A stretch of 63,859 bases of DNA from Pocillopora damicornis. Lineage: Eukaryota. This document shows, piece after piece, positions 20,674 to 63,116 of this stretch. The first letter of the stretch is position 1. Each line of letters starts with the position of its first letter. Both the position numbers and the translations under genes were made by a program. Where the stretch lies: the NCBI RefSeq assembly GCF_003704095.1, contig NW_020846747.1, positions 62,142 to 126,000 on the forward strand, read 5' to 3'. The notes beneath the pieces are model-generated. The model was not told the DNA's origin. It did no database searches and saw nothing but the letters and a program-made list of their open reading frames with translations.

Positions 20674-21250
20674 AAAACCCAAGATATCATCAACCAAAAA
20701 AGTAGATCCAGCGTGCCTCTGATTTGTTAAGATGACCTCAGTGATAGGTATCACATGGATTCTTAGGATTGCCACAGACTTGAAAGCTTTTTCCTTTCTG
20801 TAGTATCCGTATGTTGTTTTAAATAGTCTAACAAGGTACGGTAAATTTATCGTTTAAGTTAGAAATAGTTCTCTTATTAACAAAACGGGAAAACATGATG
20901 CTAGGTATAAGTGATCATTTTTAATAGAAGTAATTATGATAAAAAAAAAAACTCGCCCCCCTCCCAGTCACCCTTACTCAATCAAGAAATGCCCTCTGAA
21001 ACCTAATCTTGAATGGATTGATCTTCAATCACCTTTCAAAATATCGAATAAAAATCACTAAAACTCAAAGTAAAATGTTAATACGCCATGGAATAACCCC
21101 ATCTTAGTGTGTTTCCTTGAAATTCATGTTACGCAGGTGTCAAACCTCAGAGTAGGGCTCCCTGACTTCATAACTGTCTTCTGTAGGCTTTTTTATTTTC
21201 CTGTGCTATGCTGCTAGTGGAGATTAAAGCCCTGCAATCATGCAAAAGCA
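20674..21250 (+). pseudogene. Family-B GPCR remnant (TM6-TM7 exon and start of the last exon)
   Basis: gttaagatgacctcagtgataggtatcacatggattctt...tagtatccgtatgttgttttaaatagtcta matches the VKMASVMGVTWIL...WYPYVVLNSLQG exon at 32309-32471, with frameshifts and TGG>TAG. A (G)FFIFLCYAA-like exon starts at 21187. Confidence 0.85.
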
Positions 21251-22192
21251 GATTTCCTGCGATTCCCAGTATCCACTTACCGACAAGCGAAAGCACTTGC
21301 AATATGGCTAACAGTCCGGGAGCTCAAGAAACGCACTTTTAGGTAAAAGACGACCAATGATTATTCGGAGATATTTTTGTCTGTTGTTCAAGACGCTCTA
21401 CGCCAAAGGTGCCTCTCTTCGCCCAAAGGTATAAATCAGCATGACCAGAATGTCAAGACAAGGGGTTACCGAAAGTGTAACTGCGTCGCTGATTCAAGAG
21501 TGTTTGATAGTGCTCCACAAGAAAAAGCAAAATTCACCAGTATTCTGGGAAAACAAGAACAACAGGGTGATCAAGAAGGGAAAGATAGAAATTACAGGAA
21601 AACATTTTCATTTACCAAAAAGTTTCAATAGATTAAGGACATGTTTGTGTGAATAACAACAATACATTACTTTATGAAGCAGATGCTGCAAACATTTGCA
21701 GGTGCGTCTTAAGGTAAAATACGTAAGCTTAGAGCGTCAGATATCGATTTCAAATTAAAACCGGACTAGGAGTACGAGCAGTTTTGAATATCAAAATTAT
21801 CATTTTTGAAAAGATTGATTATTTGAAAGTTACAGGCTGAATTTCTATGATAGTTAACTCTGGAGCCAAAGTAACCACTTCTAAGTAACCGAAATGGTAA
21901 TGTGATCTTAGAGTAGCGTGCCCATGTTTAAAAGGTTTTTTTTATTATTTTTTTTATTTTTAACATTCAAAGAAGTCTCGAGGCTATTAAAAACCTGCAG
22001 CATGAAAGAAACAACGTATAAGCTATATCCAGATAAGAAGTGGGCATGTTGAGTACAAAAAGTGAGTCTTGTTTCCCTTCGACCCTTAAATTCCCCTCGA
22101 CTTTGCCTTAAGGAGCATTGAGGTTTTCGGGGGGGAAAAAACTCACTGTTCCCTTAGGCCAGTAATCAAGTGCTCAATATGTGATATGATGA

Positions 22193-24562
22193 GCGACGAA
22201 GTGCCATCAGAGGGGTTGAAGGCGATAGTCTATGGAAATGAAAACATTTATTCGTCATCCATAATGATGACATTTGCCCCGAAGACCATAAACTTAAATA
22301 TCGCCTTTTAGATATGTACGTGAAACCTCATAATAATGGACAACAAATTAGCCTAATGTTCATATCACTTTGTGCTGGTAGCATGCGGGTGTTTTGTGAC
22401 TATTAAAAATATGACAAAAAGCGTCAACTTGATGGAAATTTTGAGGAATGATAGATGATAATTCATGCTCTCTAAAAGCATTGAAAATTGTTAGACACCG
22501 GCGCACTCGAATGAAACTGAAAGATTCAACATATTTATTGGAGAAAAAGACATCTATTTATGGTTTACCCACCAACTGCTTGATCAAAACATCTTTATAA
22601 CAAGGAAAAGAAGAAAGACTGCAACGCGGCAAAATATCTTAAGTACAGAAGGTACTTCCTATGAGCATAAATGAGAACTAAGTTTTCAAACATTTCCATA
22701 TGTAGAAAATACTACGCTTTGAGCAGTAGTGGTAAAACTAGAAACACAATTTTAGAGCTACGATTTGAACATGTAAAGTAATCGAAATTTCATATTGATC
22801 CACATGTGTTCTATTCGTCTTAGATTTTTTTGTTTTTTTTTTTTGTTTTTTTTTTTGCGCAATTAACAACGAGAATCCATGAATGCATACGATATATTTA
22901 ATATGTGCATCGAAGGATGTGCCGAGAAAAAAAATTTGGCCCTCATCTGTCTTATTATGGCTGTCTACGGCCGTCTATTATGGCTGTTTTTGGCTAAGTA
23001 TTAATCTTTTCCGTGTAGAGTACAACCCTGCTAACACTTCCAAGGGAAACGAAAAATGGCTTGAGTTACGGGAGTTTATGTTGAATTTTAATCATCTTGT
23101 TAATGATTCATAAGGAATCGTGTGTTTACTGTTCTTGCTGTGTTTTAGAAGATCGTTTAGTCTGGGAAGTTTAGCTACATGCACTAAATTTTCATTAATG
23201 TTATCATGTTAAATCGTGATCATAGATTGGGAAGTATCAATCAGTTACAATCAGACACTGACGTTCAACGACCAACGTTTTTACTTAACGATCGAGTTAT
23301 CGGGGTAACTTTGAGGTAAGAGAAAGTATTGTAAAGTTAGTTCAAGGTTAAGGGAGTTCGAGTTAACCGGGTTCGAGTAAGCTGGTAGGGGTTAAGTTCC
23401 AAAGCAAATCGTGGGTCCAAGTTAACCAAGTTAGTTAGGTTCTATACTTTTTCTACTTTAAAAGAAGGGCTTTTATTTCGCCAAAAGTCATGTTTTATTC
23501 CGGCTGTTTCAATACCAGAATCCGTTTCTCAGGTTCATCCATAGAATGATGTTACTGCTTGGCTTCTGGTGCCTACAAATCATATTTTTATTCAATACGT
23601 TGACGGTTATCTCGGAAAAGATAACAGGTAGGTCTGATTCCTTCGTTACTGTTGTTGCCAGATGAAATTTCCTATATGCAGCCCCTTTTTAGCAACACGC
23701 GATATTCTATCCACCGAAGAAGTCACATAATATGCTTTATTCCTTTATGAAAACTGCAGCGTAGCCTCAACCATATTCAATATGATATGTAACCCTGAGG
23801 TTAAGTGATATCATGAAAATACCTGCAAAAAAAAAAAAAAAAAGCAAACAAAAACAAAAAAACAACGAAACAGGTAAATGAAAAGAAGAGAAGAGAGCAA
23901 AAAAGAGCAACATAAAATATATTAACTTATATGGGTCTTATAAAGGAAATGGCGTTAAGGCCGTCTAGGAGACAAACAAGTCCTGAAATCAGATTTCATT
24001 ATCACTGAAGGTCCTCCATTTGCTGTTGAACTGTCCTAACAGATAGCCTTTTTTCGTCCAGATGCAGATAAAAACACGAGCGCAAAAATGGATCTGGAAT
24101 CCTTCCTCTTGAGAACTTTAAGACCTGACTTCGGCTCACATCTTGTGTCCATCAATGGTATGTTTGGTGGATCTACTCCTTTGTTTTTAAGAAATATATA
24201 TATATATTAGCAATTTAACTAAAATCCGCGAATGAACAGAGAGAGAAAATCCTAGAGTATCCCTGGCAGAGGCAGCACATTTAGCGAAATTCCAAATTTT
24301 TTCATTTTACATTCATTTTTCAGTGATAGAGCATTGTCATTATATGTGACGTTATACATGCTTTTACGTGTAAATGTATTCGGAAGTTGTTCCATTTCTC
24401 ATGATATGATGGCAAAAAAGTAATAGATCATTCTTAAAAACGGGGATGGAATCTTGTAGAGAAAGAAAAGAGTAAGAGGCTTTTAAGATTAACAGATGTA
24501 ATTTTAAGTGGATATATCAGTTGCTGCTTGCTTTTATTTTGAGTTCAGCCTAAGCTTTGGAG
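22193..24562. repeat. Segmental duplication: inverted, diverged copy of 36490-38457
   Basis: Collinear reverse-complement matches, e.g. gtgccatc...gatagtctatggaaat, gagaactttaagacctgacttcggctcac and atatcagttgctgctt...cagcctaagcttt. Confidence 0.9.
23546..23627 (+). CDS. Signal-peptide-like first coding exon (MMLLLGFWCLQIIFLFNTLTVISEKIT)
   Basis: 82 bp from ATG to a phase-1 donor (ag|gtaggt). Length and frame are conserved in the inverted copy at 37204-37285. Confidence 0.6.
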
Positions 24563-61735: not shown

Positions 61736-62269
61736 CTATAATGGATGCAAAACTCGCTGGCANNNNNNNNNNNNNNNNNNNNNNNNNNNNNNNNNNNNNN
61801 NNNNNNNNNNNNNNNNNNNNNNNNNNNNNNNNNNNNNNNNNNNNNNNNNNNNNNNNNNNNNNGCTAAATTTATATTGCTGTTATTGAAATAGTTTAACCC
61901 TTGCTTATCCAACTGCACTCTAAAAATCTAAATCAAGCAGAAAATACACCTATAAAAGTGAAGTTTTTGCGAAACTGTCCAAAGGGCTTCTATTTCACAA
62001 GCAAAGAAAGATTTGATTACTTAAAAAACTCCACCTATAAGGAACATTCGAAGTCCTTTGACCACCCAAAATGCACGGCTCAAATAAGACCCTGCGGCAA
62101 TAACCGACATTAAGTCTTTGACTCTGTGTTTCTCTTTTTCCCAGAATATTGGCGAATTTGCTTCTGCGTCTCTTGAATCAGCGACACTGCTTCACTTGCG
62201 TGATATAGGTTTCCTAGCTTTCAGCCTCGAGGCAGAAGCATTGCTCGCTGGGGTTCAATTTTCCCATTC

Positions 62270-63116
62270 TTTCTTCATTTGTCTGTGGTGCTTGCTTCCT
62301 AAGGACTTTGGAAAATTGGCTTTTCTCCAAGCCAATAGCAACAAAGGACAGGAAGATGAATTAAGCCTAACAGTCTTGTTGGCAACAATCCATTAATCCA
62401 TATTCTTTTCTAGGTTATACGCTGGGATAGTTAACCCTAAAATTTAAGACACAGCTCAAAGTTTCGAATATCTATTTGTTCCCCTAAACTTTATTGGCTG
62501 TTGAAAAAAGTTCATCCCTTTTTATTTATTCTGTCCAGACGTCTTACTTGTGACAGATTTTAGCGTCATTGCTATGGGAACGATTTAATGTGATCAACCA
62601 AAAATTATTACAACGAGACTGTTTTCTCTAATTTAAGGTCAGCTACCACATCGGGATACTTATTTCTGGTGATTCCAAAGAAGAAAACGTTCCATTCTTT
62701 CTCCGGCCCAAACCAGCTTTGTAACACTGAAGAAAACTTACCTTATCCCAAAAATTCATGTCTTACCCATCACTAAGGCAATTTCATGATAGATGAAAGC
62801 CAAGTTTGGGCTCTGCTGTTTTTTGGTCACTCGTCTGGCTCTCTGAATTAATTAAAGTAAGATTAACCTTGGTTTTAAAATTCAGATTTCCTTGCGGTGT
62901 TCTGTAGGTCGTACAAGCCGTCGCACAAACGATTGAATAGGCAAGGCGCAGACAGACAGACAGTTGGCTTTTGATACCCTTTGTTTACAAAAGCGTAGTA
63001 TATATTGTGCTCACCTTTCGAATTCTGATGATATGAAAGCTGGTGTGTTGCAGAGCAAAGAGGTTGAAAATCAGAATCAGTGCAACAGGCAAATGAATGA
63101 GAAGACCTTTGCTCCC
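62270..63116 (-). pseudogene. Strongly decayed family-B GPCR 3' half
   Basis: Remnants of the TM5 exon (63013-63116), an internally deleted TM6-7 exon (~62740-62842) and the last exon (FIFLSFVA, ~62275-62360). Confidence 0.8.

What the first reader, a model, noticed from the sequence alone, without database searches (positions are those of the whole stretch)
20674..63116. Co-duplicated two-gene cassette (PAN-EGF-Ig-Ig-fibrinogen-like protein plus Cys-rich family-B GPCR) undergoing birth-and-death
Seen: about 9 copies or fragments of the Ig/fibrinogen-like gene are interleaved in both orientations with about 6 copies or fragments of the GPCR. The tail-to-tail spacer (3' flank plus the same LINE remnant) recurs at ~28.3-29.7 kb, ~43.2-44.3 kb (inverted) and ~49.9-50.6 kb, and it leads into a GPCR 3' end at 29.7 and 50.6 kb. 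The pair was therefore copied as a unit. Established: clustered, rapidly turning-over Ig-containing genes mark invertebrate recognition loci, such as snail FREPs (IgSF plus fibrinogen) and the Hydractinia Alr complex. Inference: a secreted variable recognition protein (no TM segment after the last domain) is genetically linked to a signalling receptor, making this a candidate immune, symbiont-recognition or allorecognition module.
Basis: partly seen in the sequence, partly recalled or inferred. Interest (0 to 1): 0.85.

Follow-up and report, generated by a model that had tools for sequence, protein, structure and literature searches.

The report
Coral Ig-protein and receptor gene array
A stony coral (Pocillopora) carries a young, fast-changing tandem array of secreted Ig proteins lying tail to tail with a family-B receptor gene; the array is real and expressed, but this short-read assembly scrambles and collapses it, and nothing yet shows that the two genes work together.

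Summary
The repeats are real (75-94% identity) and the piece counts are about right: 8-9 pieces of a secreted gene (signal peptide, PAN, EGF-like, Ig, Ig, C-terminal domain) and 7 pieces of a 7tm_2 GPCR. The same spacer occurs three times between the two genes' 3' ends.

The layout is not reliable. The window is twelve contigs joined by gaps. Two gapless long-read assemblies of Pocillopora show every Ig gene on one strand and every GPCR piece on the other. Contig 24949-31869 is inverted, so GPCR pieces "B" and "C" are one gene. Contig 51887-58274 stands for at least three or four 6.2-kb units.

All three large Ig exons in the window are broken. Intact copies exist in the long-read contigs and in a second, gapless cluster 260 kb away (five Ig genes, one GPCR, tail to tail).

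Most GPCR "copies" are dead 3' fragments carried inside the duplication unit. Only two are whole.

The C-terminal domain has the procollagen C-propeptide (COLFI) fold, not the fibrinogen fold. It has four variable patches.

RNA contigs confirm a spliced, expressed gene.

A ligand-receptor or immune role remains untested.

The parts
20681..20851 (+). Isolated GPCR fragment (TM6-7 exon, about 53% identity to the GPCR transcript protein P0122).
   Evidence: tblastn. The same fragment lies in long-read contig L012 at 4521-4652.
22187..24399 (+). 5' region of GPCR 'BC', with exons 1-2 at 23546-23674 and 24061-24156. The rest of this gene is the piece at 29607-31865.
   Evidence: In L012 these exons run straight on into a full gene.
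24949..28277 (+). Ig gene copy 1, truncated: upstream region, PAN 26089-26340, EGF-like 26682-26816 and a single Ig exon 27987-28277. It has no Ig2 or C-terminal domain. Contig 24949-31869 is inverted relative to long-read assemblies.
   Evidence: P. verrucosa has the same truncated copy.
28351..29428 (.). Tail-to-tail spacer, copy 1, with a LINE ORF2-tail remnant at 29066-29203.
29607..31865 (-). 3' part of GPCR 'BC': part of the large exon plus four 3' exons. It is cut by the gap at 31870.
   Evidence: It is 93.4% identical to L012 10474-12718.
32307..37285 (-). GPCR-A, nearly whole: exons 1-3 at 37285-36265, an intact large-exon ORF at 33369-34658 (429 aa) and 3' exons down to 32307. The last exon is missing at gap 31870-31969.
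   Evidence: The 743-aa spliced transcript proteins P0122 and P0392 match it.
39999..42223 (+). Ig gene copy 2: PAN 40065-40316, EGF-like 40406-40540 and large exon 40953-42066. The large exon has a +1 frameshift near 41126 and a TGA at 41164.
   Evidence: The shortened 267-aa ORF recurs in a cluster of 153 public sequences at 90% identity or more.
42466..42759 (+). GPCR fragment D, on a 347-base contig between two gaps.
43262..44298 (.). Spacer copy 2, inverted in the window.
45059..48832 (-). Ig gene copy 3: PAN (part, at the gap) 48707-48832, EGF-like 48279-48449 and large exon 46347-45059 with a -1 frameshift near 45580.
   Evidence: The P. verrucosa counterpart is intact.
48938..49810 (+). 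Ig gene copy 4: Ig2 plus the C-terminal domain only. It starts at a gap and has an in-frame TAA at 49436.
49939..50571 (.). Spacer copy 3.
50623..51786 (-). GPCR fragment E (3' exons only), cut by a gap.
   Evidence: It is 96% identical to P. verrucosa L010 1-1267.
51887..58274 (+). One collapsed unit of the Ig-only tandem array. It holds the end of a C-terminal domain (51888-52115), a 27-bp minisatellite (52479-52768), the signal-peptide exon (to about 54556), PAN 55161-55411, EGF-like 55740-55854, an extra Ig exon 56195-56485, and the start of the large exon (58133-58274).
   Evidence: It matches three or four successive 6.2-kb units of the long-read contig at 94.6-98.3% identity. RNA contigs give GT..AG joints between all five exons.
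58375..59854 (-). Ig gene piece 7: PAN exon 58688-58939 and upstream region, lying between two gaps.
59955..61652 (-). Ig gene piece 8: upstream region only.
   Evidence: It is 98.4% identical to ctg66620 137536-135872.
62193..63089 (-). GPCR fragment F (TM6-7 and last exons only).
63140..63835 (.). 27-bp minisatellite (about 26 copies) that lies next to GPCR fragments of type F.
   Evidence: The same block lies beside the type-F fragments in the long-read contig, alongside 311 other direct repeat pairs.

Best explanation
This is a real, young tandem gene array in Pocillopora damicornis.

The amplified gene encodes a secreted protein: signal peptide, PAN/apple, EGF-like, two or three Ig domains, and a C-terminal domain with the fold of the fibrillar-procollagen C-propeptide (COLFI). 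The array sits tail to tail against a family-B (7tm_2) GPCR that has a somatomedin-B plus Cys-rich DUF8401 ectodomain.

Repeated unequal crossing-over between direct repeats of 6-9 kb copied the Ig gene. Some units have an end inside the neighbouring GPCR, so those units carry a dead 3' stub of it. Other units carry no GPCR sequence at all.

The copies then follow birth-and-death. Some stay intact and are expressed. Others acquire frameshifts, stops or truncations.

Amino-acid change is concentrated in four short patches of the COLFI-like domain. One of them lies where procollagens carry their chain-recognition sequence.

Inferred, not shown: the COLFI-like domain makes the protein an oligomer with a variable binding or assembly surface, so the family is an extracellular recognition or adhesion family. 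The link with the GPCR is most likely one of descent and neighbourhood rather than a proven functional pairing.

The window's own picture (both orientations, many gap-bounded pieces, no intact large exon) is largely a product of a short-read, Chicago-scaffolded assembly. That assembly collapsed and misplaced the repeats.
For: Identity of the genome:
- The scaffold is 837,277 bases and the assembly 234 Mb in 4393 pieces. Both match P. damicornis RefSeq proteins and the genome paper (PMC6208414).
- That paper says high-identity repeats were not assembled.

Real repeats.

Long-read checks:
- ENA contig ctg66620 (484 kb, gapless, 93-99% identical to the window) has all Ig genes on one strand and all GPCR pieces on the other.
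- A 39-kb stretch of it has 312 repeat pairs and none inverted.
- A second contig from the same sample has the same layout.
- The P. verrucosa chromosome assembly shows the same alternation, including the same truncated Ig copy.

Collapse: window 51887-58274 matches three or four successive units at 94.6-98.3% identity.

Co-duplication: collinear homology runs across the Ig 3' end, the spacer and the GPCR stub.

Second cluster: five intact Ig genes and one GPCR lie tail to tail, without gaps.

Broken copies.

Expression and splicing: four GT..AG joints in poly-A metatranscriptome contigs, and spliced 743-aa GPCR and 520-aa Ig transcript proteins.

Fold:
- The model has pLDDT 93.
- Procollagen C-propeptides match at E about 1e-8 and TM 0.62-0.65 over the whole domain. 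Fibrinogen domains match at E about 1e-2 and TM about 0.3.
- Pfam COLFI scores 28.3 bits against a cut-off of 26.2.

Variable patches:
- Entropy peaks lie at four sites.
- dN/dS is 2.2 in the patches against 0.19 in the rest of the domain.
- In-frame length changes fall at two of the patches.

General context: tandem duplicates are pervasive in corals and under-represented in short-read Pocillopora assemblies (PMC10236652).
Against: - The long-read contigs come from other individuals or sibling species. Some differences in order or orientation could be true structural variation in P. damicornis.
- Matching pieces as orthologues at 91-94% identity is uncertain when paralogues reach 94%.
- 24 kb of ctg66620 (111.6-135.9 kb) were not seen.
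- Oligomerisation through the COLFI-like domain was not tested.
- The patch codons were chosen after looking at variability, which inflates their dN/dS.
- The repeated tail-to-tail pairing of whole genes could reflect selection for linkage. There are three instances on one scaffold, and both families share long contigs in other corals. The 'neighbourhood only' reading does not explain that.
Confidence: 0.8

Rival explanations
1. The secreted Ig protein is the ligand or co-receptor of the adjacent GPCR. The pair is kept linked and amplified together as an immune, symbiont-recognition or allorecognition system.
For: - Tail-to-tail pairing of whole genes occurs three times on one scaffold.
- In some searches, nine long public contigs (0.34-1.48 Mb) appear to carry both families, judged by matching contig lengths.
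- In Oculina the locus tags of the two families lie within about 24 genes of each other.
- The head domain has variable patches with an excess of amino-acid change.
- The GPCR has a large Cys-rich ectodomain.
- Both genes are transcribed.
Against: - At least three, and up to five, of the GPCR pieces in the array are dead 3' stubs, and long runs of Ig genes have no GPCR between them.
- The Ig gene next to GPCR-A is degenerate, with 6 stops.
- GPCR 'BC' lacks 65 conserved residues before TM1.
- In an Oculina-like coral the families lie about 155-175 kb apart at the sampled places.
- No Ig-COLFI gene lies within 10 kb of the Nematostella homologue.
- There is no binding, co-expression or phenotype evidence.
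Confidence: 0.13
2. This is an assembly or haplotype artefact. The many copies are alleles or mis-joined duplicates of one or two genes and would collapse in a proper assembly.
For: - There are twelve contigs and eleven gaps within 64 kb, and the pieces end at gaps.
- Neighbouring pieces 59178-59854 and 60185-60866 are 94% identical across a gap.
- The genome paper reports high heterozygosity.
Against: - Copies differ by 6-25%.
- Two independent gapless long-read assemblies carry more copies, not fewer.
- The second cluster has no gaps.
Confidence: 0.03
3. The Ig-COLFI proteins are ordinary extracellular-matrix or cell-adhesion components, for example of mesoglea or of tissue-skeleton attachment. 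Their copy number changes for dosage reasons, and they have no role in recognition.
For: - PAN, EGF, Ig and COLFI are all classical matrix modules.
- The COLFI-like module is very widely reused: 1727 representative clusters, many of them multi-repeat giants, and at least 64 matches in this genome.
- Overall dN/dS is 0.45 and most of the domain is conserved.
Against: - Change is focused in four surface-type patches, with length variation and a dN/dS above 1.
- A young array with rapid gain and loss is unusual for structural matrix genes.
Confidence: 0.3

Closest known systems
Fibrillar procollagen C-propeptide (COLFI, PF01410; PDB 4ae2, 5k31, 6fzw)
   Same: - It is the best structural match over the whole domain (TM 0.62-0.65, probability 1.0).
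- The Pfam score is borderline passing.
- The profile aligns to the segments around the conserved helix.
- One variable patch lies just before that helix. From my own knowledge, that is where procollagens carry the chain-recognition sequence that selects trimer partners.
   Different: - There is no collagen triple helix or coiled-coil stalk in front of it. The domain follows two Ig domains.
- It is shorter (about 190 residues against about 245).
- Sequence identity is only 16-18%.
- Trimerisation has not been shown.
Snail FREPs and cnidarian ficolin-like proteins (IgSF plus fibrinogen-related domain)
   Same: - Secreted, with N-terminal Ig domains and a globular C-terminal head that shares the first subdomain with fibrinogen-related domains.
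- A multigene family with variable copies.
   Different: - The head is not a fibrinogen-related domain. PF00147 scores 15 bits against a cut-off of 22, and fold matches reach only TM about 0.3 over about 100-135 columns.
- There is no collagen stalk.
- Extra PAN and EGF-like modules are present.
- There is no evidence of somatic diversification.
Hydractinia Alr allorecognition complex
   Same: A clustered, rapidly duplicating Ig-domain gene family in a cnidarian, with pseudogenes and copy-number change.
   Different: Alr proteins are transmembrane, from my own knowledge. These proteins have a signal peptide and no TM segment. No homology beyond the Ig fold was tested. No allorecognition phenotype is known.
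Tandemly duplicated gene clusters of corals (Noel et al. 2023, PMC10236652)
   Same: The general phenomenon is the same. About 30% of genes lie in tandem clusters, and short-read Pocillopora assemblies miss copies. This window shows exactly that.
   Different: That paper does not mention this family. The terms 'fibrinogen' and 'COLFI' are absent, and 'immunoglobulin' occurs once in another context. It does not mention a stub of a neighbouring gene carried inside the duplication unit.
Adhesion-class GPCRs with secreted oligomeric ligands (for example BAI3 with C1q-like proteins, GPR56 with collagen III; from my own knowledge)
   Same: A 7tm_2 receptor with a large modular ectodomain lies next to a gene for a secreted, possibly oligomeric, globular-headed protein.
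   Different: No GAIN or GPS domain was detected in this GPCR. No interaction was shown.

Membership tests
Fibrinogen-related domain proteins (FReD, PF00147), including FREPs | The C-terminal domain matches Fibrinogen_C above the Pfam threshold. | tested here: not met
   There is no PF00147 hit for the window copies. The Oculina relative scores 15.1 bits against a cut-off of 22, over 50 residues only.
Fibrinogen-related domain proteins (FReD, PF00147), including FREPs | The whole-domain fold is that of fibrinogen gamma/beta C-terminal domains. | tested here: not met
   In Foldseek, FReDs score E about 1e-2 and TM 0.27-0.31 over 104-135 columns. Procollagen C-propeptides score 1e-8 and TM 0.62-0.65. 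Only the first subdomain is shared.
COLFI (fibrillar collagen C-terminal domain, PF01410) | A Pfam match at or above the gathering score. | tested here: inconclusive
   The score is 28.3 bits for window 41167-42066 (cut-off 26.2), but 25.8 for P0005. It covers profile positions 31-144 of 233.
COLFI (fibrillar collagen C-terminal domain, PF01410) | The fold of the procollagen C-propeptide. | tested here: met
   The model has pLDDT 93.2. The top 17 PDB matches are all procollagen I/III C-propeptides, with probability 1.0.
COLFI (fibrillar collagen C-terminal domain, PF01410) | It follows a collagen triple helix and drives trimer formation. | tested here: not met
   No collagen repeat precedes it. 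Two Ig domains do. Trimerisation itself was not tested.
Family-B GPCR (7tm_2, PF00002) | A seven-helix region matches 7tm_2. | tested here: met
   The score is 100 bits over profile positions 4-250 of 250 in the 743-aa transcript protein. The window's large exon scores 48 bits.
Adhesion GPCR | A GAIN domain with a GPS cleavage motif lies before TM1. | tested here: not met
   There is no GPS or GAIN Pfam hit at E up to 0.1. The ectodomain model was too poor to search by fold (pLDDT 56), so a divergent GAIN-like fold is not excluded.
Hydractinia Alr-type allorecognition genes | A single-pass transmembrane protein with extracellular Ig-like domains. | tested here: not met
   The protein ends 2-3 residues after the last Cys of the C-terminal domain. 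It has a signal peptide and no TM segment.
Hydractinia Alr-type allorecognition genes | Allelic variation predicts fusion or rejection. | not testable with these tools
   This needs crosses or graft assays.
PAN/apple domain | A Pfam PAN_1 match above threshold. | tested here: met
   The score is 22.6 bits against a cut-off of 21.4 for window 26083-26346.
EGF-like domain | A Pfam EGF match, or the six-cysteine pattern. | tested here: inconclusive
   There is no EGF Pfam hit. The exon translation has six Cys in EGF-like spacing.

The most novel reading that the evidence does not exclude
The Ig-COLFI array and its neighbouring family-B GPCR form a genetically linked ligand-receptor recognition system of stony corals. 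In this reading, the variable patches of a trimer-forming COLFI-like head set partner or target specificity, much as procollagen chain-recognition sequences do. Copy-number and sequence differences between colonies would then contribute to self/non-self or symbiont discrimination, for which no anthozoan locus is known.
Probability: 0.1. Interest if true: 0.85.

Novelty: new variant of a known kind. Interest (0 to 1): 0.5.

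Why it matters
Tandem gene amplification is already known to be pervasive in corals. This locus is a clean, checkable example with three points of its own.

1. The domain architecture (PAN, EGF-like, Ig, Ig, COLFI-like) is annotated in public records only as 'contactin-associated protein-like 2' or 'hypothetical'. 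I found no description of it in the literature searched. Its head is a collagen-propeptide fold used outside collagen, with focused variable patches.

2. It shows how a duplication unit can drag along a stub of its neighbour, which mimics a 'co-amplified gene pair'.

3. It is a warning for users of the P. damicornis reference. Order and orientation are wrong here, array copies are collapsed, and both public gene models across the region are chimeric.

If the Ig family proves to be a recognition family, the locus would be a candidate for the still unknown genetics of coral histocompatibility or symbiont recognition.

Tried and rejected
- **Complex prediction.** I folded the Oculina GPCR ectodomain (P0131, residues 140-510) with the full secreted protein (P0091, residues 23-521). 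The result was no verdict (score 0.01). This is evidence neither for nor against binding.
- **GPCR ectodomain structure.** AlphaFold2 on the window's large GPCR exon, with 43 relatives, gave pLDDT 55.7. That is too poor for a fold search, so none was run.
- **PDB sequence search.** The C-terminal domain as a single sequence found nothing meaningful. Only the profile reached collagen and fibrinogen chains.
- **Pfam on other ORFs.** Pfam gave nothing for the spacer ORF, the minisatellite ORFs, or the ORFs at 6721-7749 and 16455-17432.
- **Walking the long-read contig.** One look-up failed through my own coordinate slip and one protein was not on record. 24 kb of ctg66620 stayed unseen.
- **Deep synteny.** No Ig-COLFI gene lies within 10 kb of the Nematostella GPCR homologue. 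There is none within 10 kb of the sampled GPCRs or Ig genes of an Oculina-like coral.
- **Literature.** Searches for 'contactin-associated protein-like 2' plus coral, 'COLFI' plus coral, and cnidarian ficolin-like proteins gave nothing on this family. The skeletal-matrix 'contactin-associated protein' is a neurexin-type protein, not this family.
- **Across-colony hypervariability.** Rejected as unsupported. The 46 public variants fall into about six groups, each next to a genomic paralogue. Most of the diversity is therefore between paralogues.
- **Spliced model.** The spliced gene model was searched exon by exon only.

Full report
**What the window is**

The window is G000:C3382:62142-126000, from a 234.35-Mb assembly in 4393 pieces. 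A RefSeq protein of Pocillopora damicornis (XP_027053397.1) lies on a contig of 837,277 bases, which is the length of C3382. The closest named relatives are from P. verrucosa and Stylophora.

The genome paper (PMC6208414) describes an Illumina shotgun assembly scaffolded with Chicago/HiRise. It states that high-identity repeats could not be assembled and that heterozygosity is high.

The window holds twelve N runs and so twelve contigs. I call them K1 to K12: K1 311-24848, K2 24949-31869, K3 31970-39898, K4 39999-42314, K5 42415-42761, K6 43140-48833, K7 48934-49878, K8 49931-51786, K9 51887-58274, K10 58375-59854, K11 59955-61762 and K12 61863-63859.

**Observation**

Self-BLAST finds 78 repeat pairs of 150 bases or more at 72-94% identity. 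Nearly all lie between 22 and 63.8 kb, and many are inverted.

Pfam on the open frames gives:
- PAN_1 (22.6 bits);
- two Ig domains;
- a weak COLFI match (28.3 bits, cut-off 26.2) with no Fibrinogen_C match;
- 7tm_2 for the 429-aa frame at 33369-34658.

I then ran tblastn with a full-length Oculina relative (P0091, 521 aa) and a 743-aa Pocillopora GPCR transcript protein (P0122). This maps eight or nine Ig-gene pieces and seven GPCR pieces (coordinates under 'parts').

The spacer recurs three times and runs collinearly into GPCR 3' exons. It carries a faint LINE ORF2-tail match.

**The gaps, tested first**

Almost every piece starts or ends at a gap.

I compared the window with a gapless 484-kb long-read contig from a public coral sample: ENA ERZ25067899, ctg66620, fetched as L012, L013, L014, L016 and L019. 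It is 93-99% identical to the window.

- Its first 8.6 kb match K1 on the same strand.
- It then matches K2 in reverse (31869 down to 24949) at 93-99% identity.
- Window GPCR pieces 'C' (exons 1-2 in K1) and 'B' (the rest, in K2) are therefore one gene split by gap 24849-24948, and K2 is inverted.
- K3 (GPCR-A) matches a place 58 kb away, next to array units that match K9. GPCR-A's own last exon is present there, just beyond the point where K3 stops at gap 31870-31969.
- Mapping all twelve contigs shows an order and orientation quite unlike the scaffold.

In the long-read contig every Ig gene is on one strand and every GPCR piece is on the other. A 39-kb stretch has 312 repeat pairs and none inverted.

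A second contig of the same sample (L017) has the same layout. A gapless stretch of the P. verrucosa chromosome assembly (L010) shows the same alternation. It includes the same Ig copy truncated after one Ig exon, and it places K6 inverted relative to K2 and K8.

No gap can be read as continuous or in frame, and I filled none. Some differences could be true variation between genomes. But two independent assemblies agree with each other and disagree with the scaffold.

**Collapse**

K9 begins in the middle of a C-terminal domain and ends in the middle of an Ig domain. It matches three or four successive 6.2-kb units of ctg66620 at 94.6-98.3% identity. It is therefore one unit standing for a tandem array.

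The sampled part of the long-read locus runs from about 81 kb to 167.6 kb. That is at least 87 kb, against 43 kb in the window. The flanks of the window hold no further members.

There are more copies, not fewer. It agrees with the report that short-read Pocillopora assemblies miss tandem copies (PMC10236652).

**Gene models and expression**

RNA contigs from four metatranscriptome or transcriptome runs were laid on 52300-58274. They give GT..AG joints at:
- 54554>55159,
- 55409>55738,
- 55852>56193,
- 56483>58131.

All four joints are in a poly-A run, and two of them recur in an oligo-dT run.

The exons translate as a signal peptide, PAN, a six-Cys EGF-like module, an extra Ig domain, and the start of the large Ig-Ig-C-terminal exon. 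The array gene is thus a spliced, expressed, three-Ig form.

Two-Ig full-length transcripts also exist (P0404, 520 aa). The protein stops 2-3 residues after the last domain.

The GPCR is expressed as a spliced 743-aa protein in many transcript assemblies and in three Pocillopora annotations. It has a somatomedin-B domain, a Cys-rich region that the database labels DUF8401, and 7tm_2. No GPS or GAIN domain was detected.

I searched exon by exon.

**State of the copies**

All three large Ig exons present in the window are broken:
- copy 2 has a +1 frameshift near 41126 and a TGA at 41164;
- copy 3 has a -1 frameshift near 45580;
- copy 4 has a TAA at 49436.

The shortened frame of copy 2 recurs in a cluster of 153 public sequences at 90% identity or more. 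Its defect is therefore real and widespread.

Intact large exons of 376-379 codons occur as follows:
- three in the array part of ctg66620;
- one in its alternating part;
- one in L017;
- one in P. verrucosa.

Beside them lie a six-stop copy, two truncated copies and a C-terminal fragment.

Among GPCR pieces, only GPCR-A is whole and canonical. 'BC' keeps an open frame but lacks 65 conserved residues just before TM1. The rest are 3' stubs (TM6-7 and tail exons). Those of type F are followed by a 27-bp minisatellite.

**Was the pair copied as a unit?**

Yes, but mostly as an Ig gene plus a stub. In the gapless contig, collinear homology of 3.9 kb at 82-93% identity runs from the C-terminal domain through the 3' flank and the GPCR stub into the minisatellite. 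Neighbouring units repeat every 8-9 kb. Elsewhere, 6.2-kb units hold only the Ig gene.

Whole-pair duplication is older:
- GPCR-A and 'BC' each lie tail to tail with an Ig gene.
- A second, gapless cluster lies 260 kb away on the same scaffold. It has five intact tandem Ig genes (54-62% identity to the window's) followed by one GPCR (46%) tail to tail, 2 kb apart.

Both families thus give the same simple history: window cluster against second cluster.

**Linkage outside Pocillopora**

- In Oculina the two families carry locus tags about 15-24 genes apart on one chromosome. The 26 kb around one Ig gene hold only Ig genes.
- In an Oculina-like long-read contig, GPCRs lie at 230-252 kb and an Ig array at 405-426 kb.
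- Nine long public contigs appear to carry both families, judged by matching contig lengths.
- Near the Nematostella homologue there is none.

The neighbourhood is therefore conserved in robust corals. The tight pairing is shown only in Pocillopora.

**The C-terminal domain**

An AlphaFold2 model built with 40 relatives has pLDDT 93.2. In Foldseek against the PDB, the first 17 matches are procollagen I and III C-propeptides (E 2e-8 to 3e-6, TM 0.58-0.65, whole domain). Fibrinogen-related domains come far behind (E about 1e-2, TM about 0.3, 104-135 columns).

A sequence profile reaches both groups, but only over the shared first subdomain. The domain is therefore COLFI-like.

It is a widely reused module. 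It has 1727 representative clusters at E up to 0.001, many in multi-repeat giant proteins, and at least 64 matches in this genome.

**Variability**

Among 46 public large-exon proteins, entropy peaks at four short patches of this domain. In P0002 numbering they lie near residues 238, 281, 317 and 360.

Among six intact genomic copies:
- overall dN/dS is 0.45, with mean dS 0.13;
- the 36 patch codons give 2.2;
- the rest of the domain gives 0.19.

The patches were picked after looking at variability, so this is only suggestive.

In-frame length changes fall at two of the patches. The first patch lies just before the helix that aligns with the procollagen helix. By my own knowledge, the chain-recognition sequence sits there.

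A tree shows that most public variants group with one of about six genomic paralogues. The diversity is therefore mainly between paralogues.

**Mechanism**

Shown:
- tandem amplification of direct repeats;
- stubs of the neighbour carried along;
- mixed intact and broken copies;
- expression of the array gene;
- a COLFI fold;
- focused variation.

Inferred:
- unequal crossing-over as the process;
- oligomerisation through the COLFI-like head;
- a recognition or adhesion role.

Not shown:
- any coupling to the GPCR. One complex prediction gave no verdict.

**Comparison and novelty**

The locus is not a FREP or a ficolin-like gene, because the defining fibrinogen domain was tested and not met. 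It is not Alr-like, because it has no TM segment.

It belongs to the known phenomenon of coral tandem duplicates. It has an undescribed architecture and an unusual use of the collagen-propeptide fold. I rate it a new variant of a known kind, with moderate interest.

Noticed in passing
window 29607-37285: The RefSeq model XP_027053397.1 (LOC113680558, 743 aa) takes exons 2-4 from GPCR-A (100% identity at 36942-33393). It takes the exon for residues 582-627 (100%), and probably the next one, from the other GPCR gene in contig K2 (30685-30198). It is therefore a chimera made across gap 31870-31969.
   Followed up: partly
window 40134-52115: The original annotation model pdam_00003333 (RMX38186.1, 784 aa) strings together pieces of Ig copy 2, another copy and the C-terminal fragment at 51948-52115. 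It holds three C-terminal-domain pieces and steps over the frameshift.
   Followed up: partly
window 52479-52768 and 63140-63835: A 27-bp minisatellite lies at these two places. In the long-read contig it extends over 1-2 kb and lies beside the type-F GPCR stubs, before the next Ig gene's upstream region.
   Followed up: partly
L012:10001-11068 (counterpart of window 29607-31865 plus the gap): GPCR 'BC' keeps an open 355-aa large exon but lacks 65 conserved residues immediately before TM1. The lost stretch includes the conserved Cys-containing motif. The shortened frame recurs in 68 public sequences.
   Followed up: partly
window 54587-54688: RNA-contig depth here is very high (120-300 against under 50 elsewhere), and there are many loose ends. 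This suggests a short dispersed repeat inside intron 1 of the array gene, transcribed from many loci.
   Followed up: no
window 5050-6084, 6721-7749, 16455-17432: There is an intronless rhodopsin-family GPCR (7tm_1, E 6e-49) and two intronless ORFs of 342 and 325 aa with no Pfam match. The 325-aa ORF is 98.8% conserved in the long-read contig.
   Followed up: partly
L017:886-4152: An apparently intact LINE (1088-aa ORF with endonuclease and reverse-transcriptase domains) sits inside the Ig array of the second contig of the same sample. It is not at the matching place of ctg66620, so this is a structural difference between the two contigs.
   Followed up: no
window 41914, 42018, 49626, 49762: In-frame length differences of 30, 6, 9 and 6 bases between copies fall in two of the four variable patches of the C-terminal domain.
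   Followed up: partly
G000:C781 and G000:C1291: Two other scaffolds hold ten or more matches each to the COLFI-like domain alone, without the Ig part. These point to further tandem families built on this module.
   Followed up: no
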